Assembly (NCBI RefSeq): GCF_006345805.1
Contig: NC_043013.1
Location: forward strand, 26,040,001 to 26,104,000
DNA length: 64,000 bases
Direction of reading: 5' to 3'
Source: Octopus sinensis
Taxonomy: Eukaryota
Shown here: positions 2,294 to 63,200 of the stretch, piece after piece
Layout of the letters: each line of letters begins with the position of its first letter
How positions within the stretch are numbered: the first letter of the stretch is position 1
The notes under the pieces: generated by a model
The model's input: only the letters and a program-made list of their open reading frames with translations
What the model was told of the DNA's origin: nothing
The model's database searches: none
Made by a program: the position numbers and the translations under genes

Positions 2294-2437
2294 CAATATC
2301 TGTTTCAATACACAAGTCCACATCAGAAATCTTGCAAAATATATTGATAACCATATATATATATATATATAAATAGATGAGTGTATTTTTACCTTGTTAA
2401 CAATTAACAAGGAAAAAAAAAATATATATATATATAT

Positions 2438-3190
2438 CAGTGTGCACACATGACAGTGTAAGCTCCCTGAGAGAAATATTGGACATAAGAAGCATCAGAT
2501 GTGGCATGCAAGAGAAACGTTTGCGCTGGTATGGCCATGTACCATGGATGGATGAGGAGAGCTGTGGGAAGAATGACACGCCCAAACAGTTGAAGGAATC
2601 TAGGGTGGAGGTAGAGCCAAGAAGACAAGGAATGAGGTGGTGAAGCATGACCTTCAAACGTTGGGCCTCACAGAGGCAATGACGAAAGACTGAGACCTCT
2701 AGAGATATGGTGTGACTGCGAAGATCCAGCAAATAAAGTGAGTTCACAGCTGTAACTTACACTAGTGTCGCATAACCAGCCCCAGCCCACTCAAAAGTAC
2801 CTTGGATCATAGGACGACATGCTGTGCTTGAGGAAACCTATTGAGTCAGGTACATCAAAATCAAAATCAAATGGAAATTGTAGTTGTGATCCTCATGCAG
2901 GTGGCATATAAAAAGCCAATACCAGTGCCACCTTGACTGGCTTCCATGCCAGTGGCACCTAAAAAGCACCAACCAATCATGGTCATTGCCAGCCACTTCT
3001 GACTCATGCCGGTGGTGTGTAAAAAGCACCCACTACACTTTTGGAGTGGTTGACGTTAGGAAGGGTATCCAACTGTAGAAACAATGCCAGATCAGACTGG
3101 AGCATGGTGCAGCCTCCTGACTTCCCAGACTGCAGTCGAACCGTCCAACCCATACCAGCATGGAAAACGGACGTTAAATGATGATGATGA

Positions 3191-7856: not shown

Positions 7857-8098
7857 CTGGAACGTCTCAAAGACCCATTAGTTTGGCTTGATGCTGCTGC
7901 TCAAATATTTTACTCTTTTGGTTTGGCTTTCGGTGGATTAATTGCCTTTGCCAGTTATAATAAACCAACCAATAACTGCCAGAATGATGCCATTCTTGTC
8001 TCCATATGCAACTGGTTGACTGCCATCTATGCGTGCCTCGTGATCTTCTCAATTCTTGGTTATAAAGCCACCCTAATGTTTGAACACTGTCTGTCAAA
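7857..8098 (+). CDS. SLC6 transporter (B0AT/SIT1/NTT4-like), internal exon encoding TM6-TM7
   Basis: Polypyrimidine tract plus ctaaAG acceptor and GTAAGT donor. Translates [71 protein letters not shown]..., the hallmark SLC6 TM6/TM7. 242 nt, phase 0 to 2. Confidence 0.95.
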
Positions 8099-12439: not shown

Positions 12440-12590
12440 TAATGCAATTAAAATCACAAAATATTTTCCTCACATAAATATGACGGAATATGCTGATCAA
12501 GCAGTTGACTACACAACTATTGGAATACCCAGTGACAAATTGAAAGATTTGGCTCTCGTCAAATGTGACTTACAAGAAGATTTGAACAAA
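12440..12590 (+). CDS. SLC6 transporter exon encoding the long extracellular loop 4
   Basis: tttcAG acceptor and GTAAGT donor, 151 nt. The phase fits the previous exon (AA+T=Asn). Open frame NAIKITKYFPHINMTEY...LVKCDLQEDLNK contains an N-M-T sequon and the C-D-L-x-x-(D/E)-L motif that precedes A(A/S)xGTGLAF in this clade. Not in the ORF track. Confidence 0.88.
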
Positions 12591-13633: not shown

Positions 13634-14880
13634 CATCATCATCATCATCGTCGTTTAACGTCCACTTTCCATACTGGCATGGGTTGGACGAGCGAACCAG
13701 ATAGCTGCACCAGACTCCAATCTGATCTGGCAGAGTTTCTACAGCTGGATGCTCTTCCTAACGCCAACCACTCCCAGAGTGTAGTGGGTGCTTTTATGTG
13801 CCACCAGCACGAGGGCCAGTCAGGTGGTACTGGCAATGGCCATGCTCAAATGGTGCTTTATATGTGCCACCCACACAGGAGCCAGTCCAGCAGCACTGGC
13901 AACGACCTCGCTTGAATGTTTTTCACGTGCCACCAGCACAAATGCCAGTAAGGCGACGCAGGTAATGAGCATGCTCGAATGGTGTTTTTAACGTGTCACT
14001 GGCATGGAGGCTAGCTTGTTGCTCTGGCAATGATCACGCTTGTATGGTACTCTTAGCACTCCACTAGGATGGATGCCAGTCATCGAATTTGATTTCGATT
14101 TCACTTATCTCAACAGGTCTTCACAAGCAGAGTTTAGTGTCCAATGAAGGAAAGGTACGCATAAGTGGGCTGGTTAGCATAGGCCACAAGGTTATGATCT
14201 CACTTGAGCTTGCTGAGTCTTTTCAAGCACAGCATATTTCCAAAGGTCCCGGTCACTTGTCATTGCCTTGAGGCCCAATGTTCGCAGGTCATGCTTCACC
14301 ACCTCCTCCCAGGTCTTCCTGGGTCTACCTCTTCCACAGGTTCCCTCAACCACTAGGGTGTGGCACTTTTTCACACAACTATCTTCATCCATTCTCGCCA
14401 CATGACCATACCAGCACAGTCGTCTCTCTTGAACACCACATCTGATGCTTCTTAGGTCCAACTTTTCTCTCAAAGTACTAACATTCTGTCAAGTATGCAC
14501 ATTGACATTACACATCCATCGGAGCATACTGGCTTCATTTCTTGTGAGCTTACGCATGTCCTCAGCAGTCACGGCCCATGTTTCACTGCCATGTAGCATG
14601 GCTGTTCATACACATGCGCCATACAGTCTACCTTTTACTCTGAGCGAGAGGCCCTTTGTCACCTGCAGAGGTAAAAGCTCTCTGAACTTTGCTCAGGCTA
14701 TTCTTATTCTAGCAGCTACACTTTCAGTGCACCCTCCCCCGCTACTGACTTGGTCACCTAGGTAACGGAAGCTATCAACTACTTCTAGTTTTTCTCCCTG
14801 GAATGTGGCAGAAGTTGTTCTCTGCACGTTTTCAGTGTTTATTGCTCCTGAGCATCTGCGACATACAAAAACTTAGCCTT
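13634..14880 (-). mobile_element. RTE-clade LINE, 5'-truncated
   Basis: Minus-strand ORF2 C-terminus RRLCWYGHVARMDED...GRGRPRKTW, a 3' UTR with repeated modules, and a (CAT)n tail at the left end. Confidence 0.9.
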
Positions 14881-17606: not shown

Positions 17607-19124
17607 AACAACAAAGAAGATGAGGACAAATATCTGTCAAATGTAAATAATGTACATGATTCCTCATCTCTTAAATATAGAACTGTAAGATATTCTTGGT
17701 GAAACAATTATAAGAACAGAGGAACAGCTCATGTTGTTGTTGTTGTGCAGCTCCTATTCAGCTCTTACTGATTAGATGTAAAGGTTGTTGGCAGAACAAT
17801 TAAGTGCAACCCACAGATCTGAAAGAAGGACTTTGTTCTTATAGGCCTTTGACAGGGCCCATCACTTTGTTTCCTCATGATGATCAATGAGAAGCTTCCA
17901 AGAGTTGCATGATGCTGCTGCCTGAATATCCAAGTTCTGATCTCAGAGACAAGTTTAATGTAGAGGTGGATGTTTGTCAAAATGCTGCCAGAAGACTTTG
18001 CAAGGGATGAGATACAAAAATCAAGTGCAAGAATTTGGTATATCACACCATTCTCCAGATATTAGAATCTAAATTTTTGAGACATGCAAACATGCGTACC
18101 GTATTTTCTGTCTTACAAGTCAAATATTTCTGACTGAAATTTACTGCCAAAGAAGCAGGTTGACTCAGACATGAAAACAACTTTAACAGGAACAAAAAAT
18201 TCCATGTGAAATACAACAGAAAGAGAAATGACGATGTTTGTTTACATTACTTGTTTATATTATATTTATTATGTTGACATGTATGCCAGAAAATATAGTA
18301 TATTTCTATGTAGGCATATGTATATATCTATCTATATATCTATCTTAACAATGTATATCTTGAAAATCCAGTAACTTCTAAACTGGAGTGAGGCAGCATA
18401 TTCTTTGTCTATCTCCTTAACATCTTGGAGATTTCAGGTATAATTATACTAATGTATCCATCTGTTCTAATTTGATTAAATTCTATGTCTTTGTGCAGCT
18501 GAAGATTGCTCTGCATTTTAAATTGATGTAATGATTACATTGTTCAATTAAACGGAGTTGCATGAAACGATTGTACTGCATTACCTCTGAATATCCTTGT
18601 TGCTTATTTTGATACATACATATATATATATATATCTGTAAACAATTGCAGCATGGAAGGCGTTTATAAGCCATAAGGTAACTGTTAGATTCACTTCAAC
18701 ATTTAAATTTAATTTGAAGTGAATCTAACATGTCTTTTAACTGTGTGTTTTAAATGACTTATAAACACCTTCCACACTGCAATTGTTTGCATTCCAGCAC
18801 ATGATCTCAGAGCAGGTCACTTGCTATGCAAGTACATCTCCATAACTATATATACATATATATATAAATACATATATATACATATATATATATATATATA
18901 TTTAAATATCTGTGTGTACGTGCATGTATGTGTGTATATGTATGCACATGGGTATGTGTAAAGTATTTCTTTTTGTTAATCGTTTTGCTGTCCCAATGCT
19001 TGTGCATCAGACAAGAACAGCATCCCAGACATGTTCAGATCCATTAACCGTGTGCAGTATTATTTTACTCGCACAAAAAGCCAATGAATCGATTTGTTTT
19101 GTTTCCCTTTTTTTTGTGTTGTAG

Positions 19125-19332
19125 GCTGCATCAGGAACAGGTTTGGCTTTTATTGTCTTTGCTCAGGCAATTGTTGAATTTGGTCCGTCCTCACCCTTTT
19201 GGTCGTTCATCTTCTTCCTCATGCTTCTTGCACTCGGTCTTGGCACCGAATTTGCTACACTCGAGGGAATCGCTACATCAATCAGAGATTCCTCTCCTTA
19301 TGAATGGACAAAGACGAAGTGGAAGTTGTCTG
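19125..19332 (+). CDS. SLC6 transporter alternative exon A (EL4b-TM8-IL4), mutually exclusive with 19463-19670
   Basis: ttgtAG acceptor and GTAAAT donor, 208 nt, phase 0 to 1. [69 protein letters not shown]. Confidence 0.92.
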
Positions 19333-19462
19333 GTAAATTTCTCCTCTCATTTTTTTCTTTTTTATATCCTTGATGAAACAGTTTTTTTTTATCTTTGGAT
19401 TGAAGAATATTAAATGCCATCTTCATTATTTTTTTTTTTTTTCAATTTGTTATTTCTTTCAG

Positions 19463-19670
19463 GCTGCTGAAGGTACAGGATTAGCTTTCATTGTGTTTAC
19501 ACAGGCCATTCTTGAGTTTGGCGATTCTGCTCCATTCTGGTCAATCATCTTCTTTCTAATGCTTCTTGCTCTTGGTCTTGGGACAGAGTTTGCAACGATT
19601 GAAGGGGTTGCTACATCCCTCAGAGACGTTGCTCCTTTCGAATGGATGAAGAAACGCTGGCTGCTTTCTG
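19463..19670 (+). CDS. SLC6 transporter alternative exon B (EL4b-TM8-IL4), mutually exclusive with 19125-19332
   Basis: tttcAG acceptor and GTAAAT donor, 208 nt, phase 0 to 1. [69 protein letters not shown]. Confidence 0.92.
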
Positions 19671-19773
19671 GTAAATGCTAACAAGAAACAACAACAACAA
19701 CAAATGATACCTTGTTGTTGTTGTTGTCGACAATCCCTTAGTAATCAATAGCAGCTAGTCTTTTTAGTTGTAA

Positions 19774-19823
<50 letters not shown>

Positions 19824-20263
19824 GTCCTATTTCTGTAATTAGTTTTGTTGTATTATTAGCAGCCTTTTATTTCATTGTCCTCGTTATCTGTTGATTGCCA
19901 TTTCCTTATTTCCTTGGCCTAATTACCATTTCATTATTATTACTGCTTGTCTTCCTTTTCTTTGTCACACCCCACTTGTTCACCCATCTACCCTCTACAC
20001 CAGTATGCACTTACTATTGATTTTGCTTGACAAGGAGCAAAACCAATTCAGGCAGGAGGAAAAAAAAAGAATACAAAGTGTGGATTATAGACAATTAAAT
20101 CAAGTTCGATACTCATTTTATCGACCCTGGAGTGGACTTACAATGGTCTCAACTATTCAGGCCTGGGGTTAAATGAAAAAGAAAACCAAGTGAATTTAGA
20201 CAAGCTACAGATACGATTGCACTATGGATTATATACATATACATACATACACACACACACACA

Positions 20264-20348
<85 letters not shown>

Positions 20349-25212: not shown

Positions 25213-25372
25213 GTGTTTTGTGTTTGTTCAGTTTTGTGGTTGGAATCGTTTTCACGCTCAACAGTGGCGCTTACTGGGTTGAACTTTTCGACTTTTTCTC
25301 TGGAACATTTGCACTAATGATTGTGGCCTTTTTAGAAATTGTAGCAGTTTCTTACAAATACGGTATCAACAA
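25213..25372 (+). CDS. SLC6 transporter exon encoding TM9-TM10
   Basis: tttAG acceptor and GTAAGT donor, 160 nt, phase 1 to 2. GVLCLFSFVVGIVFTLNSGAYWVELFDFFSGTFALMIVAFLEIVAVSYKYGIN has the SLC6 SG.YW..LFD and E...V...YG motifs. Confidence 0.94.
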
Positions 25373-27148: not shown

Positions 27149-27311
27149 CTTTTGTAATGATGTATATGGAATGATTGGGAAGAGACCAAATATAATTTGG
27201 CGTGTCTTGTGGAAGTTTATTGCTCCTGCTCTTATTCTCATTCTTCTTGTGTCCACCATTATAATGAAGTTTATCGATCCTGTTACTTACAAAGCTTACA
27301 ACAAAAACGAG
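27149..27311 (+). CDS. SLC6 transporter exon encoding TM11
   Basis: cacAG acceptor and GTGGGT donor, 163 nt, phase 2 to 0. FCNDVYGMIGKRPNIIWRVLWKFIAPALILILL... has the F..D...MIG.RP...W...WKFI.P motif. Confidence 0.94.
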
Positions 27312-32578: not shown

Positions 32579-32872
32579 GCCACTTTGTATGATATGCAGT
32601 ACCCTCTCTTTGCTAGCCTCATTGCTGGGTTCCTGGTCTTGCTACCGATAGTTTGGCTGCCAGGAATAGCTCTCACCCGGCGCTTTGGAATGTTCAGATA
32701 TGAACCAGAAACAGCACCAATCGGTATGGAAGGAATCATTAGTTCTAGAACAGCATTTGTGGATGTCACAGACAATGCATCTGAAAGTACAAATGGTAGA
32801 AAATCGGTGATACATGCAACTTCAGATGGAACAAGACTAGCAAAGCCGAGAAGTGGAGAAAATTTTGTATGA
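32579..32872 (+). CDS. SLC6 transporter terminal coding exon (TM12 and C-tail)
   Basis: tttttcAG acceptor, phase 0. ATLYDMQYPLFASLIAGFLVLLPIVWLPGIAL...GENFV, then TGA at 32870-32872. The joined exons total 1218 nt, an exact multiple of 3. Confidence 0.92.
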   Translation, partial: ATLYDMQYPLFASLIAGFLVLLPIVWLPGIALTRRFGMFRYEPETAPIGMEGIISSRTAFVDVTDNASESTNGRKSVIHATSDGTRLAKPRSGENFV

Positions 32873-34506
32873 AACCATGATTTAATTTTTTTTTTTTAAT
32901 GTTTGTGTCTGCAGAAATTTGAACACAGCAAAATGACTTATTCTTATATAATTAATAGAAAAAAGAAATTCTCAAATAATGAAATGGGTGATTCTAACTT
33001 TTGAACAATTATGTGTATATATGAATGTATGTAAATGTAATGAGTGAGTGTGTGCAGAAGAGAAAGACAGAGTGAGAGTGAGAGTGGGTGAGGGAAAGGG
33101 AGAAAGAGTTGAAGTGTAACTGTATATAGTCATAGAAAGACTTGATTGTATATAACTGTATATATGTATCTAAATGCATATGGATGTGTTTATTGGTGGC
33201 AGTGTGTAAACACATTTATAAATATGTGTGTATGTGTGCATGTGTGTGTGAAAGGATGGATGTAGACTATGGCATAGCAAGCATTTTCAGTGTCTGGGGT
33301 CAAAGACTTTTTAGCACTTCCACCTTTTAAGTAACCAACATGATAAACCAGAAGAAATTTTACATCCTTTCACTCCTGGGTCCAGAAGGAGAGAAGACTA
33401 CTCTACCTACTCTCTCTCTCTCTCTTTCTCTCTTTCTTGTTATGCCTCTCTGTATAGACGTGTGCCCATGTAAAGAATTGCTCAAACAATAGTTGGTCTT
33501 CATTCATGTAAAATATATATATATATATTTATAATTCCAAACTCAGAATTTTATACTGAACAAGCTCTGGCATTGGTTAGCAATGTTTTCTCTTATTTGG
33601 TTTGTAATTGCACCAGAGATTGGTGTGTTTTTTGACAGCAGTGAAGGGTTTCTCTCACCTTAGTTACTAACAGCTTCTGTGTCAAACTCCATTAACATTA
33701 TACAGTATTTAGTGGAAATATCAGTTTGGCTGCTAGTTTCTTGTGTCATGACTGAGCTTGAGAAACATTTTATAAGATTAAAATGTGATAACTGGTTGAT
33801 TCAATGAGTACCAGGCCTGAAGTACAACAAAATTAATGAAAAATAATTTATATCTATCATGGACAGTATGAAGTACAACATGTATAGGCATTACTTCTCT
33901 TAATAACCACCAAAATTGTTGACACATGTCTCACCTTTTTGGCATGTTGATACAGAGCTGTTTAATTTTAGTAGCATGGCCAAACAATTAAGATCTTTTT
34001 AATCTATTCCTAGAGGTATCAAGTTCAAGCCCAATGCAAGGCAACATAGGAATGTATTATTTTAACACTTGAGTTGACCAGAGTTTTGTAAGAGAACCGG
34101 TGTCGAGAGAAGCTCTGCTCAAGTTCATAACATGGATTGTACTTGTAATTCAAAAATCCAAACTTATCACATACAGCACCATGCTGATTCTGTTTAAGGA
34201 TTACATTAAAGGTGCACATGTTTGTGGAGTACTCAGCCACTTATATAACTAATTCAGTTACCTGTTTGAACAACTGAAGAGTCATTGCTGAAACTGTTAT
34301 AGATCTATTTCTAATGTCCAGTTTACCAATTTATTGGTGCTGGCTCTGTTCTTTTAGATAATAGCCATATTTAAATACACCAACATATCAATGCCTTTTT
34401 ATGCATTAGAAACGTCCAATATCAAATTTTAATAAATCGGTCAAGAATCTAATCCTACAACACGACAGAGCAACAAACTTTGATTTTCAAAAATATAATC
34501 GTTTAA

Positions 34507-42605: not shown

Positions 42606-42985
42606 GGAAGCACTCTGTCGGTTACGACGACGAGGGTTCCGGTTGATCCGATCAACGGAACACCCTGCTCGTGAAATTAACGTGTAAATGGCTGAGCATT
42701 CCACAGACAAGTGTACCTTTAACGTAGTTCTCGGGGATATTCAGCGTGACACAGAGAGTAACAAGGCTGGCCCTTTGAAATACAGGTACAACAGAAATAG
42801 GAAGTAAGAGTGAGAGAAAGTTGTGGTGAAAGAGTACAGCAGGGATCACCACCATCCCTGCCGGAGCCTCATGGAGCTTTAGGTGTTTTCGCTCAATAAA
42901 CACTCACAACGCCCGGACTGGGAATCGAAACTGTGATCCTACGACCGCGAGTCCGCTGCCCTAACCACTGGGCCATTGTGCCTCC
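42606..42985 (-). mobile_element. full-length tRNA-derived SINE with 12-bp TSD
   Basis: Minus-strand head TGGCCCAGTGGTTAGG...GTTTCGATTCCC. TSD ATTTAGAAATGT at 42594-42605 and 42986-42997. CpGs are retained. Confidence 0.92.
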
Positions 42986-45038
42986 ATTTAGAAATGTATT
43001 ATTTCTATGTCCAAAGTTATCCCAACTGTACAAAGAAAGACCAGACTCACTCCTTAATTAACATTTTAGAGTTATCTCCCCCTACATTTTTATTTTAAGA
43101 GAAACGAATGTGTGTGTGTGTGTGTGTGTGTGCATTTATAAAGATTTCACTAAGACTAATAACTTGGTGGTAGTACTCAACATACATTTGCTTCAGAATA
43201 AAATTCTAGCCAAGTACAGAGCATGGTATAAAATTCAATAAATGACTGTGGAACAAGAAATTAGGCAATGAACTTCATTAGCTTACAGTTCTGCCAAAAG
43301 ATGTAATGCGCTCAGAGCTGGGTGTTTGTGCATCACCTTATAACTTCCTCAGTTCTTCTAAAATGAAATGTAAAGTTTATTCAGTAAAGCATTTATATAC
43401 ATATTCTGTCTATCTTCTATGTATGCGTATGAAAAGATATTTATTTAAGGGTTCATCATGTGTTTTAGTTTATAGGCGCAGGAGTGGCTGTGTGGTAAGT
43501 AGCTTGCTTACCAACCACATAGTTCCAGGTTCAGTCCCACTGCGTGGCACCTTGGGCAAGTGTCTTCTACGATAGCCTCGGGCTGACCAAAGCCTTGTGA
43601 GTGGATTAGGTAGACAGAAACTGAAAGAAGCCTTACACCAGATGCAACATTCAGATCTTCTTTGCTGGTTTCTATATTAGCTAATATTATTTTATTCTGA
43701 AAACGAGGGGCAATAGCTATGTATTGATTGTGAGCATGATGCATAGAGTTACATATGTATTTTCATATGTATAATGACTCACTGTGTACTGATGCTGTCA
43801 TGACCCCATTCCAAGATGTTATTATCATAAATATTCTCGCTGTCAGTATCATCATTGTCATCACCATTGATATAATATTTATCTCATTGTTTATATGTTC
43901 CGGCCACCTCTGTCCTTAAGGCAAGACTTATACCTCAGATTTCAGATAGCAAAATCTCAGAAAAATAGCTACGGATATGCTTCTGGACATTATTAGCCTG
44001 TGCAAAATGTGGATATTATCCTTGTGTAGTTTAACATTGTTGTACAATCAACCATTTTCAGCGTTTTTTGCATTTTTCTCAAAATGTCGTTTCAGATTAT
44101 GAGTAGCAATCTTTAGGTCACAATATCTCCAAGAATATTTGATGTAATAGGCTGAAATTTTGCATGTGTATTACTTTGATAGATGCCTAGAGGTCGTCTA
44201 GTGTGATTAGATACACTTTATTTGTTCATCTTCCAGAGACACTTGAATACTACTACCCAGGCGTCAAAAATGCTTCAACTGCTGCATATGGCTATGAGCC
44301 ACCCCACAACGAAATCTAGGCTAACTTCATCAATGTCTTTGATCCAGCATCTAGTCTGTTACCCCAATAGGACTAACATTGTTCTTGATGTATGCCATAT
44401 TTGGTTTGCTTAGGTTTTATTTCCGCTGAATGAGAGCATCTTCGATTTAGGGGTGTTTTCCTATGTCTAAGATGTTAGTCTTGCTTCAAGGCAAATATTT
44501 CTTGATGAGATATCATTAAATGTTCCAGTTTGTGTGTGAGTGTTTGTACAGACATACCACAAGTGAATAAATGCACATTAGCGTCTGCATTACAAGAAAA
44601 AAGTACTCATTACAAGCTGAAAACTGAAACTCAGAAATTACATTCATAAATTTTCAGTGGCTTTTATTAAATTTATGTACATACAAAGCAAGATGTATAA
44701 ATCTACTGAATTTTTGTGTTTTTACAGCATGAAACTATTGGTAGCTCACATTTAAATACTGTTTATATTAAATGACATTTATCTTTCACTGGATGGCCTG
44801 TACTTTTTTTGGTCATCCTACAAATAACAGAACAGAACTACACACACACACACGCACGCACAAACAAACACATATGCATGTGTGTATATATGTATATATG
44901 TATATATATATGTGTGTGTGTAAATGCTTGTTTTTATGTTAAGTTATCTAAAAAAATATTTACATTAAACTGAGGGATTACTCAAAACAGTTTAACATGA
45001 AAAGTGTTGACAATGACTTCTATCTATCTATTTATCTA

Positions 45039-49764: not shown

Positions 49765-51479
49765 CTGAAGCTCAATTTTGTTTTGGTAACTCACTAGATG
49801 CAATGACCTAATGTATAGCTGATATGTTGATACAAAAATATCTTGAACATGCTTTTTATTGTGACTATTTTTCTGACATGGGTTATAATGGTTGTGAAAC
49901 TTCCCTTGACATTTTTTTTAACAAACTGAGAATCCATTAGATGAAGGTTCTGAGCATTTAAACCAATAATTTTGATATTATTTAGTGAATGCCTTCTTCA
50001 CTAACAATCAAAGGCTTTCTTACATTGTATAGTGATAATTCTGACAAATGTCAGGTTATGCCGTAATTGGATTTAAAAATTTATAACACAAATATTTCTC
50101 TTTATCTTCCTACCAAAAAAAGAGAGAAAGATTCCAAAACTTGGTATCTTTCCGAATAGTCTTTAAATTTTAGAATCCAGACTAGAACATAGTCAAGGAG
50201 CCAAGGATACATCTTGCTTATCAAAAAATATGTTTCTCATACTGATATTAATATTTTTGATGTTATCATTAATTTTATTATTAGTAATAACATTGTTTTA
50301 TCATATAAGTAATATTCTTGTAGCTCCTTTTATGCTTCCTTTAAGTCTGGGTTCAAAATAAAAGTACTATCTTTTTCAGAATTTCAAGCATTCTTATGAA
50401 AAACAATGCAGGAACAAAGATGCAGAAATTATCACTGCGCAATGCCAAAAATTTTGAATGAAATTAAATAAACATTTTTAAAAAATAAAAATATACTCCT
50501 GAAAAGGTTAAAAAAAAATAAAAACAGACATTAAAAAATAGTTATCTGAGGCTTGTATATTTTAGCATCAATCCTGTACAAAGATGGAGACATTTTGCAG
50601 TCTTACTCAATGCTTTGTATATAGATGTTGTGATTGTCAATCTAAATTGTCACTTATGCCTATGACATAAGGTGGTTCACTGATTCAGTTCTTGTTATGC
50701 TGATACAGTACAGATTATCTGGGAGGATTTGAGGAAAAATTCACCAGAATGTTATGTCTTTGTAATTATATTTCCAGGCAGCTAATTAAAGTTTTTCTCT
50801 CTTACATTCACTGTTTCCTTTTCTCTTTTTCTCTCTCTTTCTCAATATATTATCATCATTTCATCTTCATCATTTATTGTACATGTTTAGTGACTTTAAA
50901 GTTTTGGCCTGTTAGCCTCCAACAGACTGTCTTGATATTAATTTCCCTGGTTATGCTCACTCATGACCCAATTTAACATGTAATATGTGTGGGCGGTGTC
51001 TGTCTGAGTAGGCAAGCCTTAGAAGTCATCAGAGAAACCACACTCAGAGGGAAATTTATAACTATGCATTATATGGCATCTCTTACTTGCAGGGAGTGTG
51101 GAAAAGACTGTGCATCAGCAGGCAGGCTGAAATAGTAGGCTAAAACTTCAAAGTCACTGTCACCTATCTCTTTGTTAAAGTTTAATAAATGCGTGTGTGT
51201 GTGTGTGCATGTCTACATGCTTGCATGTATCTGTACATATAGACAACTCCTTTGCTGTATTGGTAGCTTACAAAGATATTGCTTTGCCAGTCATTAGGCA
51301 TGTATATACTTACAAATGTACAGAAGTACAGATGTATATATACCCAATGACATTGTAAGCTACTGAAAAGGTCAAAGGTGATGTTTTAGACAAATTACTG
51401 CTTCAGGTCAGGAATGTAATACTGAGAGTCATAGAAAAGTTGATCTATGATGAAGTAAACCAAGATGATAAACAGTTTA

Positions 51480-57894: not shown

Positions 57895-59521
57895 CAGTTG
57901 CGGCCAAAGTTTTCAGAACGGCATTGTTTTCGTCAGAAAAGTAGGTATAAGTTTTTATCAAAGTTGTTTTATATTCTAAAAGTTTCACAGACAATAAATA
58001 CGATATAATTTGTTACTGCCTGAGATTTTGGTGTAATTTGAGAGGATAATACAAAAGTTATGGATGATTTAGTGATTTACTGCAAAACCCATGGCGGCCA
58101 AAATGATCAGAACGGTTGCTTTTACTCCGTGTTTTAGTATATTTAACCGGCAATCTCTAATGTTTTGAATTTGCTTACGTGACGGTTCGTTTACTAAACA
58201 TTAGTAAGAATATTTGCAGTGTACTTTGTTAATATAATGCCTCTTACTCCGTTACCAATTCGTCAGCAGATTATTAAGCTTCGAAGGAAGGATAATTTAA
58301 GTATTGGATCTATTGCAAAGATTGTTAACAAGTCAGAAAGTGTTGTACACGGTATTCTTAAGGTCTACGATGATTGTGGTTCGTGTGAAGCAAGAAAGTT
58401 TACAGGTAGGCCAAGAAAAACGACCAAGAGAGAATATCGTGCTATGGTAAAGTTGGTTAAAAAGGACAGATTTAAAACTGCTGCTGGTGTTTCTCGGAAA
58501 ATGAGCATTGTATTGAAGAAAACTTTATCTCGAAAAACTGTGTCTCGTCGTTTAGTTGAACATGACCTACAAGCAAGAGCACCTGCAGTGAAGCCACTGA
58601 TCAGCTCCAAAAATAAAAAGTGTCGTCTTACCTTTGCAACCGAACATGTGTTGTGGTCTCAAGAAAAATGGCAAACGGTGCATTTCAGTGATGAATCTAA
58701 GTTTATGTTATTTGGCTCAGATGGGAAAAGGTACGTTCGTAGAAAAGTAGGTGAAAAATTGTCGCCTAAATGCCTTAAGACTAGTGTTAAATTCGGTGGA
58801 GGAAGTGTCATGGTTTGGGGGATGATATCTGGAGATGGTGTGGGCCCTTTGGTGCGATTACATGGAAATGTAAATGCAGGAGTGTATAAACAACTTGTAA
58901 AAGATCATGTCTTGCCTGTGCTGAGAAATTCAACTAAGCGACCACCCATATTCATGCAGGACAATGCCCCATGTCACAAGGCTAAGGTGGTCATGAACTT
59001 CCTCAAGGCTGAAAAGGTTACTGTTATGGATTGGCCTGCTCAAAGCCCAGATCTCAATCCTATTGAAAATGTATGGAATATTCTAGGAAAACGTTCGAAA
59101 GCCAGAAATCCTAAAACAACTGAGCAATTATGGAATGCCCTTCAGGAAGAATGGAATAAGATCACCCCGCAAGAAATTGAAAATTTAATTTCCTCACGCA
59201 GTCGAAGATGTCAGATTGTGATTGAAGCTAAAGGGCTTCACACTAAATATTAAATAATTCCAGTATTCTCTGTCATTTTTGATTATTTTGTTATTTTTTC
59301 AACCGTTCTGATCATTTTGGCCGCCATGGGTTTTGCAGTAAATCACTAAATCATCCATAATTTTTGTATTATCCTCTCAAAGTACACCAAAATCTCAGAC
59401 AATAACAATTAATATTGTATTTATTGTCTGTGAAAATTATAGAATATAAAACTACTTTGATAAAAACTTATACTTACTTTTCTGACGAAAACAATGCCGT
59501 TCTGAACATTTTGGCCGCAAC

Positions 59522-60559: not shown

Positions 60560-63200
60560 GAGAAATAGGGACACATGTTGGAACAAAACGTACAGGAGAA
60601 ACCCAAAGTGATTAACTTATCAAGGAAAACTCTGTCTATAACAAAAATCAATATACTATGCAAAAGGTTTAAAATTCACTCCAACCCCACCAACAGCTAA
60701 CCATAATGAAATTAAAGACAATATCTCGGAATTCTGCAGAAAACTACGACTCGCAGAAGCACTAACTGACTACGACAACGAAGATGAATCACTAGTCAAA
60801 AACAGAAATAATTACCTTCCACATAAGGGTAGGAATAAAACACTGGATGACGTCTGCAACCATATCCAAAATTTCCCCCACACATCCAATAAACGAAAAA
60901 TTAATCCGAACCTCAACAATCTAGAATGGAAAAATCTAACTGAACTACAAAACGACAAAGACCTGACAATTAAAGAAGCAAACAAAGGAAGTGCTGTAGT
61001 TCTGATGGACACAGAACACTATAAAAAACTAGTACTATTCATACTAGAAAATGAGGCCTTCTACGAAAAAGTTATAAACTATAAACAACAAAAAACAATG
61101 AAAAATCTTGCATCCTTAATTCTTCTACATGGAAAAGGTCTGACAGAAAAAGAAACAGACTACATCACGAACTTCAAATGTAAACCCAGTCTTTTTTATG
61201 GCCTTCCTAAAATACCCAAGAGCAAGATAATCAATGAAGCCTGCAAACAATCACCAGGCAAATTTATAAATATCCATACGCCAGAAGACTTAACTTTAAG
61301 ACCCATTGTAGCTGGGCCAGCCTGTGAAACCCACCGCCTAAGCAATTTTCTAGACATTCTACTGAAACCCTTGCTTAAATACATCAAAAGTTTCATTAGA
61401 GATGATTTAGACATGCTAGAACACCTACCAAAAACAATTAATGAAGAGGCAATATTGGTTACCCTCGATGTTATCAATCTTTACACCAACATCCCCCATG
61501 AGTATGGAATAAAAGCAATTAAATTCATGTTGGAAAAGTAGCCCGAAGTACTCCCGGAACGCATAAACCAGATTTATACTTCAGAACAATTATTTCCTAT
61601 TTGATGACACATACTATCGTCAGAAATACGGATTTGCGATGGGAACGAAAGCAGCTCCCGTTCTTGCGAACCTGGTAATGGGTTATTTTGGATTCACCTT
61701 ATATGAAGTTTCACTTCAGAAATATGGTTACCCATTTTACCTCTACATAAGAGAAAATTGGAAGATGACTGCTTTGTCATTTGGAAGGAGAATATCGACA
61801 AACTTTTGGACTTCAAATCAACACCAAATGATATAAATAGTAACATTCAATTCACAATGGAATACAACAAAGAACAACTCCCATTTTTAGACATCATCAT
61901 AAAAAAGTTAACAATGAAATCATAACTGACATTTATTTATAAACCAACTGATTCAAAACAATATCTTCTCTTTAACTCATGCCACCCGAAACACATCAAA
62001 ATAAATACCCCTTTCAATTTGGCAAAAAGGATTTGCACAATAGTGTCTGATAGAACGACTCGGGACTTTCGTCTTCAAGACCTCAAAACAACGCTTACTG
62101 AAAGACAATACACACCCTCACTTATCGACGAAGGAATTAAACGTGCCAAACAATTAGACACAAAAACTCTAAGAACAACAAAACATAACACCACACCTCT
62201 ACTCAAAACGTTACTATTTATATCAACACACAACCCAGAAACAGTGAGGCATTCAACACTATTGTGCAAACTCTTCCTTTACTAACTAGAGATCCAAAAA
62301 TGAACAACATCCTGAAAACACACAAACTCATCAAATGCAAAAAACAAGACAAATCGTTAAAGAGACTACGAACAAATGCGAAACTTTACAAAACAACCAC
62401 GAAAGCAACGGTTGAAAAATGTGGACACCCAAACTGTGGAACCTGCTCCAATGTACTTGAAGGCTCGGATTTCCTTTTCAAACAACGACAGAGGTTCACA
62501 ATTAAAACTAGTTTCACTTGTGCCTCTGAGAACCTAATTTATGTAATAACCTGCTCGGGTTGCAGACACAACTATATTGGACAAACGAGTATGGCTTTGA
62601 GAAAGAGAACTACACTACATAAAGAGCAAATCAGTTTCCCACAGTACAGGGAAATTCCTCTCAGTGAACATATAGAAAAATATGCAGATAACATCAAACC
62701 AAATTTCACAGTCTTCCCCTTCTACCAGTGCAAAGATACAGTTTCTCCACAAGAACGTTTAAATAAAGAAACTTTTTGCATTGAAAAATATAGAATACAT
62801 CTTAATATGCACACATAACCAACTTTTAGCTTTTTACATATTCCAATTCACGATTACATCACTGTACATAAATCCCCTCACTAAACAAGGTTTTCGAAAC
62901 TTGTCTTTGTCTGTACATATATATCCCCACTCCTATTACCGAAAGCTGAACAGTTATCTCCCTTACCCACAACAATAACAATAATAACGATGATCAATTA
63001 CCTCCCTTTATTTATCTACTTGTGAAGTCATTCACTCGTGAATTTCATCACACACAACTTGGGACAAAATTTCTTCTTAAGAAAAAATACATATTCAAAT
63101 AAGTAAAACAATATTATGAATAGCGACAGCGAAACTGGTCGATATATTAAAAATTATATTAAAACTATGTAAGTGTGCGTATTTTCCTTTTTTAATTTCT
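60560..63200 (+). mobile_element. Penelope-like retroelement (RT + GIY-YIG endonuclease), decayed
   Basis: N-terminal [10 protein letters not shown] motifs LRPIVAG, LVTLDVINLYTNIPH and AMGTKAAPVLANLVMG. Endonuclease ENLIYVITCSGCRHNYIGQT. There is an in-frame TAG at 61539-61541 and several frameshifts. Boundaries are approximate. Confidence 0.9.
63110..63148 (+). ncRNA. degenerate minimal hammerhead ribozyme motif at the 3' end of the Penelope-like element
   Basis: aatat-tatga-ata-GC gaca GC-GAAAC-TG-GTC-gatatatt. GAAAC, a GUC triplet and stem I complementarity are retained; the CUG of the core is lost. Confidence 0.5.

What the first reader, a model, noticed from the sequence alone, without database searches (positions are those of the whole stretch)
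19125..19670. Tandem duplicated, mutually exclusive exon pair swapping EL4b-TM8-IL4 of an SLC6 transporter
Two 208-nt exons lie 130 nt apart. Both have AG/GTAAAT splice sites, the same phases (0 to 1) and open frames. Their proteins are 53/69 (77%) identical by manual count, with many silent differences, which suggests an old duplication with both copies under purifying selection. Including both gives G+GC TGC TGA, a stop at 19468-19470. Skipping both frameshifts 12590 onto 25213. Only one-of-two splicing gives a protein. The swapped segment contains TM8, which carries Na2 and substrate-site residues in LeuT-fold transporters (established). I know of no such switch in vertebrate SLC6A15-20, so this may be an undescribed isoform switch in cephalopods or molluscs.
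Basis: partly seen in the sequence, partly recalled or inferred. Interest (0 to 1): 0.88.

Follow-up and report, generated by a model that had tools for sequence, protein, structure and literature searches.

The report
Octopus amino-acid transporter alternative exon pair
An octopus gene for a B0AT/XTRP3-type amino-acid transporter carries two tandem copies of one 208-base exon, and exactly one is spliced into each mRNA; octopus and cuttlefish share the pair, public gene annotation already lists both isoforms, but no searched paper describes it.

Summary
Exons A (19125-19332) and B (19463-19670) are both 208 nt and have the same splice phases. They are 53/69 identical in protein. dN/dS is about 0.08, with synonymous sites saturated.

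Including both exons, or neither, gives a premature stop. Every other exon of this SLC6 (PF00209) gene is single-copy in the window.

The window matches Octopus sinensis/vulgaris. RefSeq isoforms X1 (XP_029647067.2, exon A) and X2 (XP_029647066.2, exon B) differ only at the 16 residues of this exon. O. bimaculoides keeps both exons, 129 nt apart.

In the cuttlefish Sepia esculenta, assembled RNA-seq transcripts carry either an A-type or a B-type exon. Outside that 208-nt segment they are identical apart from 1-4 SNPs. A-type exons from octopus and cuttlefish group together (bootstrap 0.95), so the duplication predates the octopus/cuttlefish split.

Four non-cephalopod molluscs have a single exon at this position.

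The Na2/substrate motif LGLGTEF is identical in A and B. The differences lie in EL4b, the ends of TM8 and IL4.

This is a new member of a well-known kind: a tandem-duplicated, frame-enforced mutually exclusive exon pair. It is already annotated but apparently not described in the literature. Functional consequence and tissue pattern remain untested.

The parts
7857..8098 (+). Constitutive exon encoding TM6-TM7 ([22 protein letters not shown]...). It is the first exon of the gene inside the window; the N-terminal half of the gene lies upstream of the window.
   Evidence: tblastn of SLC6 homologues; splice sites and frame; exact match to P0277/P0392.
12440..12590 (+). Constitutive exon encoding EL4a. 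It ends in phase 0 with donor AAA|GTAAGT. This is the upstream exon that is spliced to either A or B.
   Evidence: exact match to the O. sinensis isoforms.
19125..19332 (+). Exon A, 208 nt, encoding EL4b-TM8-IL4. It is the derived copy and is used in O. sinensis isoform X1 (XP_029647067.2) and O. vulgaris CAI9735210.1.
   Evidence: The A-type clade with the cuttlefish A exon has bootstrap 0.95.
19333..19462 (+). 130-nt intron between A and B. It has a U2-type GT...AG, a T14 tract and a plausible branch site (TTCAT) about 38 nt upstream of the acceptor.
   Evidence: Read directly from the sequence. It is 129 nt and about 94% identical in O. bimaculoides.
19463..19670 (+). Exon B, 208 nt, encoding the same EL4b-TM8-IL4 segment. 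It is the copy closer to the ancestral state and is used in O. sinensis isoform X2 (XP_029647066.2), which is identical to O. vulgaris CAI9735209.1.
   Evidence: It is 83% identical to the single Solemya exon, against 70% for exon A.
25213..25372 (+). Constitutive exon encoding TM9-TM10. Its acceptor is in phase 1, and it is the downstream exon joined to A or B.
27149..27311 (+). Constitutive exon encoding TM11.
32579..32873 (+). Exon encoding TM12 and the C-terminal tail. It ends ...GENFV with TGA at 32871-32873. The GT at 32868-32869 is used as a donor in the RefSeq isoforms.
50380..50457 (+). Alternative 3' terminal coding exon (NFKHSYEKQCRNKDAEIITAQCQKF*) of RefSeq isoforms X1 and X2.
   Evidence: Exact peptide match in the window.

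Best explanation
The window holds the 3' half of the Octopus sinensis/vulgaris gene for a B0AT1/XTRP3-like SLC6 amino-acid transporter. One exon, encoding extracellular loop 4b, transmembrane helix 8 and intracellular loop 4, was duplicated in tandem. This happened on the cephalopod lineage before octopuses and cuttlefishes diverged.

[quoted passage not shown] The result is two full-length transporters that differ at 16 of 689 residues.

Each exon is 3n+1 nt long. Including both, or neither, therefore shifts the frame and produces a premature stop. Only single-inclusion mRNAs can encode the protein, and the other products are expected to be removed by nonsense-mediated decay.

Exon B keeps the ancestral mollusc residues. 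Exon A carries five substitutions shared by octopus and cuttlefish (E3S, T13A, A23S, I28F, I46L), located in EL4b, the extracellular end of TM8 and next to the S1-lining position. Octopus exon A also has its own changes in IL4, just after the conserved gate aspartate.

I infer that the switch tunes gating, kinetics, affinity or regulation rather than ion coupling.

Status of each step:
- Shown: the exon anatomy, the frame logic, the existence of both single-inclusion mRNAs and annotations, conservation, and purifying selection.
- Inferred: removal of the aberrant products by NMD, how the choice between exons is regulated, and the functional difference between isoforms.
For: Anatomy and frame logic.

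Only this exon is duplicated; all other exons are single-copy in the window.

Family: PF00209 at E = 1e-168. The closest solved structures are human B0AT1 (E = 9e-178) and SIT1/XTRP3.

Annotated isoforms: O. sinensis X1 and X2 differ at 16 residues, all within positions 393-457. Two O. vulgaris proteins show the same pair.

Transcripts: Sepia esculenta RNA-seq contigs of 2.1-2.4 kb carry a full 678-aa ORF with either an A-type exon (listed in 67 blocks of the index) or a B-type exon (2 contigs). The coding sequences differ at 61 sites within nt 1206-1413 and at only 1-4 sites elsewhere. The runs are traced to S. esculenta.

O. bimaculoides has both exons intact, 129 nt apart. Exon A differs at 4 nt (one amino acid) and exon B at 2 synonymous nt.

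Selection: dN/dS is 0.079, pS is 0.71, Fisher P = 4e-13.

Orthology of the A-type exons: NJ bootstrap 0.95.

The orthologous genes of Solemya, Patella, Argopecten and Pomacea have a single exon here.

Precedent for NMD enforcing exclusivity of non-3n exon pairs: PMC4165533 (14 of 19 such clusters in C. elegans) and PMC5740500.
Against: No junction-level read counts were available, so strict exclusivity, the amount of double-inclusion or skipped product, and tissue specificity are all untested.

The octopus evidence consists of annotation models. I cannot see how much RNA-seq support they have.

The 130-nt intron is long enough to be spliced out, so nothing in the sequence physically prevents double inclusion. 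Exclusivity at the protein level rests on the frame rule.

The A-clade bootstrap comes from only 69 residues.

The functional inference rests on motif alignment and recalled structure-function knowledge, not on any assay.
Confidence: 0.9

Rival explanations
1. One of the two exons is a decaying pseudo-exon, or a copy that is never productively used, and the gene makes only one protein.
For: Full-length cuttlefish assemblies are far more often A-type (listed in 67 blocks of the index) than B-type (2 contigs). Automated models in O. bimaculoides mishandle the pair.
Against: Both frames are open and both splice sites are intact in O. sinensis and O. bimaculoides. dN/dS is 0.08 with saturated synonymous sites, which cannot arise if either copy had drifted neutrally since a duplication that predates the octopus/cuttlefish split. 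B-type full-length transcripts exist in cuttlefish. Between the two octopus species, exon B has only 2 synonymous changes and exon A has 4 nt changes.
Confidence: 0.04
2. The pair is an assembly artefact, or the two 'isoforms' come from two paralogous genes collapsed together.
For: None specific.
Against: The same arrangement, with spacing of 129-130 nt, is present in two independent octopus assemblies. All other exons are single-copy. Cuttlefish A and B transcripts are identical outside the 208-nt segment apart from 1-4 SNPs, and are identical over the 42 nt of 3' UTR compared.
Confidence: 0.01
3. Both exons are used, but exclusivity is imposed mainly by a dedicated RNA mechanism (competing docking/selector pairing, or steric hindrance). 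In this view the frame rule plus NMD is only a backstop.
For: A very stable 16-bp hairpin sits 18 nt downstream of the exon B donor (z = -6.7). Complementary TA/CA microsatellites bracket the pair. The intron sequence flanking and separating the two exons is 87-94% identical between the two octopuses.
Against: The hairpin and the bracketing repeats are microsatellite sequence of a kind common in this genome. Intron conservation around A and B is within the range seen around the constitutive exons (50-97%). The donor-to-branch-site distance of about 90 nt argues against steric hindrance. Both introns are U2-type GT-AG. No cuttlefish genomic sequence was available to test for covariation.
Confidence: 0.15

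Closest known systems
Tandem duplicated exon substitution events / homologous mutually exclusive exons, for example SLC12A1 exons 4a/b/c, SLC7A2, SLC25A3, and the C. elegans and Drosophila MXE clusters
   Same: - A tandem duplicate of a single internal exon, with equal length, equal phases and homologous sequence.
- A length that is not a multiple of 3, so joint inclusion or joint skipping shifts the frame and leads to NMD.
- Ancient origin with both copies under purifying selection.
- Located in a plasma-membrane transporter, a gene class enriched for such events (PMC8373072, PMC9741552, PMC4165533, PMC5740500).
   Different: It is in an SLC6 (LeuT-fold) gene. 'SLC6' does not occur in the main text of the three human and fly papers I searched for it, and two further literature searches found nothing. 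It is specific to the cephalopod lineage.
Human B0AT1 (SLC6A19) and SIT1/XTRP3 (SLC6A20), the closest solved structures
   Same: The same family and subfamily, with a full-length alignment at E = 9e-178 and E = 1.5e-170. The segment homologous to the duplicated exon is [16 protein letters not shown]...LGLSSMFGNMEGV in B0AT1.
   Different: From recall and the catalogue checks only, no A/B alternative for this segment is known in the vertebrate genes. The octopus protein has LGLGTEF where B0AT1 has LGLSSMF. Dependence on a collectrin/ACE2-type partner is unknown for the octopus protein.
Orthologous single-exon genes of other molluscs (Solemya velum, Patella caerulea, Argopecten irradians, Pomacea canaliculata)
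   Same: The same exon boundaries and the same exon order (TM6-7, [EL4a], EL4b-TM8-IL4, TM9-10). They are 73-83% identical to exon B.
   Different: There is only one copy of the exon. No second copy is detectable between the flanking exons at tblastn E < 1.

Membership tests
SLC6 / sodium:neurotransmitter symporter family (Pfam PF00209), amino-acid transporter branch (SLC6A15-20-like) | A full-length match to the SNF profile above the gathering score. | tested here: met
   P0392 and P0277 score 561-563 bits against a cutoff of 27, covering profile positions 1-519 of 524. Each exon alone scores 59-62 bits at profile positions 323-387.
SLC6 / sodium:neurotransmitter symporter family (Pfam PF00209), amino-acid transporter branch (SLC6A15-20-like) | The closest characterised relatives are B0AT1/B0AT3/XTRP3 rather than monoamine, GABA or glycine transporters. 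| tested here: met
   PDB search: B0AT1 at E = 9e-178 and SIT1 at E = 1.5e-170, against GlyT2 at E = 1.6e-121 and SERT at 1e-108. Source names of homologues agree.
SLC6 / sodium:neurotransmitter symporter family (Pfam PF00209), amino-acid transporter branch (SLC6A15-20-like) | Na+-coupled amino-acid transport activity. | not testable with these tools
   This needs heterologous expression with uptake or electrophysiology assays.
Homologous mutually exclusive exons (tandem duplicated exon substitution) | Adjacent exons of similar length, the same splice phases, compatible splice sites and homologous sequence. | tested here: met
   208 nt and 208 nt, phases 0 to 1, AG|...|GTAAAT for both, 77% amino-acid identity.
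Homologous mutually exclusive exons (tandem duplicated exon substitution) | Mature transcripts that contain one exon or the other and are otherwise identical. | tested here: met
   S. esculenta RNA-seq contigs of A-type and B-type are identical outside nt 1206-1413 of the CDS apart from 1-4 SNPs. O. sinensis X1 and X2 and the O. vulgaris pair show the same.
Homologous mutually exclusive exons (tandem duplicated exon substitution) | Double-inclusion and double-skipping products are absent or removed. | tested here: inconclusive
   Both products carry premature stops by sequence. No such product was seen among the database proteins, apart from two repaired O. bimaculoides gene models that are annotation artefacts. 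There are no read-level data and no NMD test.
Homologous mutually exclusive exons (tandem duplicated exon substitution) | Both copies are maintained by selection across species. | tested here: met
   dN/dS is 0.08. Both exons are intact in O. bimaculoides. A-type and B-type exons are present in cuttlefish and group by type.
RNA-structure-guided MXE clusters (docking site/selector, Dscam or 14-3-3zeta type) | Conserved intronic docking and selector sequences whose pairing is mutually exclusive. | tested here: inconclusive
   Only microsatellite-type complementarity and one (AAC)n/(GTT)n hairpin were found. The two octopus genomes are too similar (87-99% identical in this region) to show covariation.

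The most novel reading that the evidence does not exclude
The A/B switch is a coleoid-cephalopod innovation producing two functionally distinct transporters from one gene. The isoforms might differ in substrate affinity or turnover, or in dependence on an accessory subunit, through the five conserved changes in EL4b and the outer part of TM8. They might be deployed in different tissues such as gut or renal epithelium versus nervous system. If so, the pair would serve as a natural chimera series for the role of EL4b-TM8-IL4 in LeuT-fold gating.
Probability: 0.3. Interest if true: 0.55.

Novelty: new member of a known kind. Interest (0 to 1): 0.4.

Why it matters
Mutually exclusive, tandem-duplicated exons are rare, are usually functional, and are concentrated in channels and transporters. 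This one places such a switch in an SLC6/LeuT-fold transporter, a family that is intensively studied structurally.

The switch replaces exactly the EL4b-TM8-IL4 module while leaving the Na2/substrate motif untouched. Selection has kept both versions since before octopuses and cuttlefishes diverged.

That offers a ready-made pair, or four natural variants if the cuttlefish exons are counted, for asking how the extracellular lid and the cytoplasmic end of TM8 tune transport.

It is also a practical annotation point. Two O. bimaculoides RefSeq models include both exons and are almost certainly wrong.

It does not reveal a new mechanism.

Tried and rejected
- Protein searches with a 254-aa composite and with the 69-aa exon profile returned no cephalopod hits. 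In practice the tool only returned hits up to about 1.75 times the query length. A 405-aa composite then found the octopus and cuttlefish proteins.
The exon-profile run gave only single-exon ORFs from other invertebrates and added little.
- Exact look-ups of the ORF containing exon B found nothing.
- Same-length insect 'isoform' pairs (Nyssomyia, Megalopta) were checked as possible parallel MXEs. They differ by only 1-2 residues and are not MXEs.
- Flanking-intron conservation between the two octopus species was tested as a sign of splicing regulation. It is at the high end of the range seen around constitutive exons but not outside it.
- Steric hindrance and U2/U12 incompatibility were considered and rejected from the sequence: the intron is 130 nt and both introns are GT-AG.
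- Literature searches for SLC6 or cephalopod MXEs found nothing relevant.
- The species behind the third set of transcripts (P0280, SRR24189490-504) could not be identified.

Full report
OBSERVATION

- Exon A spans 19125-19332 and exon B spans 19463-19670 on the + strand. Each is 208 nt.
- Each is preceded by a pyrimidine tract and AG, and each is followed by GTAAAT.
- The intron between them is 130 nt.
- In the frame set by the upstream exon both are open. The other two frames of exon B contain stops. For exon A one of the other frames contains stops and one is open.
- The peptides are 53/69 identical and the DNA is 149/208 identical. Of the 43 differing codons, 27 are synonymous.
- The repeat finder recovers the duplication as a 246-nt unit, 19093-19338 against 19431-19676, at 72% identity.

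GENE MODEL

tblastn with SLC6 homologues, together with reading of the splice sites, gives a + strand gene with these exons:

| Exon | Encodes |
|---|---|
| 7857-8098 | TM6-7 |
| 12440-12590 | EL4a |
| 19125-19332 (A) or 19463-19670 (B) | EL4b-TM8-IL4 |
| 25213-25372 | TM9-10 |
| 27149-27311 | TM11 |
| 32579-32873 | TM12 and tail, TGA at 32871-32873 |

The N-terminal half of the gene lies upstream of the window. Only the A/B exon is present twice.

Splicing in A alone or B alone gives an open frame to the stop codon. Splicing in both gives ...KLSGC* with TGA at 19468-19470. Splicing in neither shifts the frame.

SELECTION

The Nei-Gojobori estimates for A against B are pS = 0.71 (saturated; dS about 2), dN = 0.167 and dN/dS = 0.079. 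Differences by codon position are 14, 8 and 37. Fisher's test gives P = 4e-13.

Random placement of the same 59 substitutions never kept the frame open with 16 or fewer amino-acid changes in 20,000 trials.

If either copy had been neutral since a duplication this old, dN would approach dS. Both copies have therefore been constrained for most of their history.

IDENTITY AND ANNOTATION

A 405-aa composite query found full-length proteins. The window matches Octopus sinensis/O. vulgaris exactly.

- O. sinensis XP_029647067.2 ('XTRP3-like isoform X1') contains exon A.
- O. sinensis XP_029647066.2 (isoform X2), which is identical to O. vulgaris CAI9735209.1, contains exon B.
- O. vulgaris CAI9735210.1 contains exon A.
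- X1 and X2 are both 689 aa and differ at exactly 16 positions, all within residues 393-457.

The mutually exclusive pair is therefore already represented in public annotation.

The two O. bimaculoides RefSeq models are artefacts. One keeps both exons in frame by reading 'GKFL' into the intron, and it also lacks the TM5 exon. The other reads exon A in the wrong frame.

The O. bimaculoides genome itself has both exons intact, 129 nt apart. Exon A has 4 nucleotide changes (one amino acid, E to Q) and exon B has 2 synonymous changes.

TRANSCRIPT EVIDENCE IN A DISTANT CEPHALOPOD

Logan assemblies of RNA-seq runs contain contigs of 2.1-2.4 kb with a complete 678-aa ORF that is 79% identical to the octopus protein. 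Several of the runs are listed in the data-availability statements of Sepia esculenta papers.

- Protein P0394 and its near-identical variants (P0279, P0395, P0397) carry an A-type exon. P0394 is listed in 67 blocks of the index and P0279 on 9 contigs.
- P0396 carries a B-type exon and is on 2 contigs, from SRR19578107 and SRR9970006.
- The A and B coding sequences differ at 61 positions, all between nt 1208 and 1410 (the exon spans 1206-1413). Elsewhere in 2037 nt they differ at only 1-4 positions. The 42 nt of 3' UTR that could be compared is identical.

This is the signature of an exon swap in one gene, not of two paralogues. The contigs have no room for introns, so they are spliced mRNAs with single inclusion. 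The contig counts suggest that A predominates in whole larvae, but contig counts are not a quantitative measure.

AGE AND POLARITY

On the 69 residues, octopus A, cuttlefish A and the A-type exon of a third, unidentified cephalopod (P0280) form a clade with bootstrap 0.95.

They share S3, A13, S23, F28 and L46. Octopus B, cuttlefish B and the outgroups have E3, T13, A23, I28 and I46. B is therefore the conservative copy and A the derived one.

A three-point estimate with Solemya as outgroup, from the amino-acid differences, gives about 12.5 changes on the A branch against about 3.5 on the B branch.

Both cephalopod copies share residues that the other molluscs lack (A36, T41, A44, R54).

The orthologous genes of Solemya velum, Patella caerulea, Argopecten irradians and Pomacea canaliculata have a single exon between the TM6-7 and TM9-10 exons.

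The duplication therefore happened on the cephalopod lineage before Octopodiformes and Decapodiformes split (taxonomy). From recalled molecular-clock estimates, not checked here, that split is of the order of 250-300 Myr old. Nautilus could not be examined.

WHAT IS SWAPPED

Both exons match PF00209 positions 323-387. They align with the B0AT1 segment [16 protein letters not shown]...LGLSSMFGNMEGV...LTG.

The following mapping uses recalled LeuT/SERT/DAT knowledge and was not tested here.

- Exon positions 37-43 (LGLGTEF) correspond to the TM8 Na2/substrate motif (hSERT L434-F440; LeuT A351, T354, S355).
- D55 corresponds to the cytoplasmic-gate aspartate (LeuT D369, DAT D436).

These positions are identical in A and B, in both octopus and cuttlefish.

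The 16 octopus differences fall into four groups:

- EL4b: positions 3, 13 and 17.
- The EL4b-TM8 linker and the top of TM8: positions 21, 23 and 28.
- The inner half of TM8, all conservative changes: positions 46, 49 and 53.
- IL4, directly after D55: positions 56, 57, 59, 62, 64, 65 and 67.

The IL4 block of octopus A ([10 protein letters not shown] against VAPFEWMKKR) adds two Ser, two Thr and one Tyr, but the cuttlefish A exon does not share it. The conserved A/B distinction is therefore on the extracellular side.

My inference is a modulatory difference in gating, kinetics, affinity or regulation rather than a change in ion coupling.

HOW EXCLUSIVITY WORKS

What can be shown is the frame rule. 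The exons are 3n+1, so double inclusion and double skipping both give premature stops.

Removal of those products by NMD is inferred by analogy. In C. elegans, 14 of 19 non-3n MXE clusters show NMD dependence (PMC4165533), and frame incompatibility is the commonest restriction among conserved MXEs (PMC5740500).

Steric hindrance is unlikely. The intron is 130 nt, and a TTCAT branch-site candidate lies about 38 nt from the acceptor, which leaves about 90 nt from the donor. Both introns are U2-type GT-AG.

A perfect 16-bp (AAC)n/(GTT)n hairpin lies 18 nt downstream of the exon B donor (z = -6.7), and complementary TA/CA microsatellites bracket the pair. These are low-complexity sequences of a kind common in this genome. 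The two octopus genomes are too similar to test for covariation. The regulation of exon choice is unknown.

COMPARISON WITH WHAT IS KNOWN

This is a textbook homologous mutually exclusive exon pair, also called a tandem duplicated exon substitution. That class is ancient, usually functional, and enriched in membrane transporters and channels (PMC8373072, PMC9741552).

'SLC6' does not occur in the main text of the three catalogue papers I searched for it, which cover human and fly events. Searches of the Drosophila MXE prediction paper for symporter, neurotransmitter or transporter genes, and of the C. elegans catalogue for snf genes, also found none. Five full-text searches found nothing on SLC6 or cephalopod MXEs.

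The finding is therefore a new member of a known kind. It is visible in RefSeq/ENA annotation but apparently not described.

VERDICT

Interest is moderate. The pair is well supported, evolutionarily old and potentially useful for SLC6 structure-function work, but mechanistically ordinary.

Noticed in passing
window 19688-19727: A perfect 16-bp hairpin of (AAC)n against (GTT)n begins 18 nt downstream of the exon B donor. The fold of 19660-19760 has dG -33.4 kcal/mol and z = -6.7. O. bimaculoides has the same hairpin with extra repeat units on both arms.
   Followed up: partly
window 18842-18955 and 20230-20300: TA/CA-rich microsatellites on either side of the exon pair are complementary to each other (about 70 nt, 82%). 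In principle they could loop out both exons, but such repeats are everywhere in this genome.
   Followed up: no
window 32868-32873 and 50380-50457: The gene has an alternative C-terminus. The GT at 32868-32869, just before the TGA of the ...GENFV* ending, is used as a donor in RefSeq X1/X2 and joins a terminal exon 17.5 kb downstream (NFKHSYEKQCRNKDAEIITAQCQKF*). O. vulgaris CAI9735210.1 uses the read-through ending instead.
   Followed up: partly
L028 (O. bimaculoides CM046617.1) 42981-43525; proteins XP_052830102.1 and XP_014772322.1: Both O. bimaculoides RefSeq models include exon A and exon B together. One adds 'GKFL' read from the intron, and the other reads exon A out of frame. The newer model also lacks the TM5 exon. 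These look like annotation errors caused by the exon pair.
   Followed up: yes
window 58198-59250 (+): An intact 351-aa Tc1/mariner-type transposase ORF (HTH_Tnp_Tc3_2 plus DDE_3, each at about E = 1e-17).
   Followed up: partly
window 60642-62815 (+): A run of long ORFs whose last member has a weak GIY-YIG hit (E = 0.003, below the cutoff). This may be a Penelope-like retroelement remnant. Short fragments of another repeat family (…RCG.QE.RLRWYGHV…) lie at 2401-2640 (+) and 14195-14488 (-).
   Followed up: no
L021-L024 (SRR24189490-504), protein P0280: A third cephalopod species (78% identical to octopus, species not identified) has full-length transcripts with an A-type exon only among the contigs found. 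Its A-type exon differs from the cuttlefish A exon at 4 residues.
   Followed up: partly
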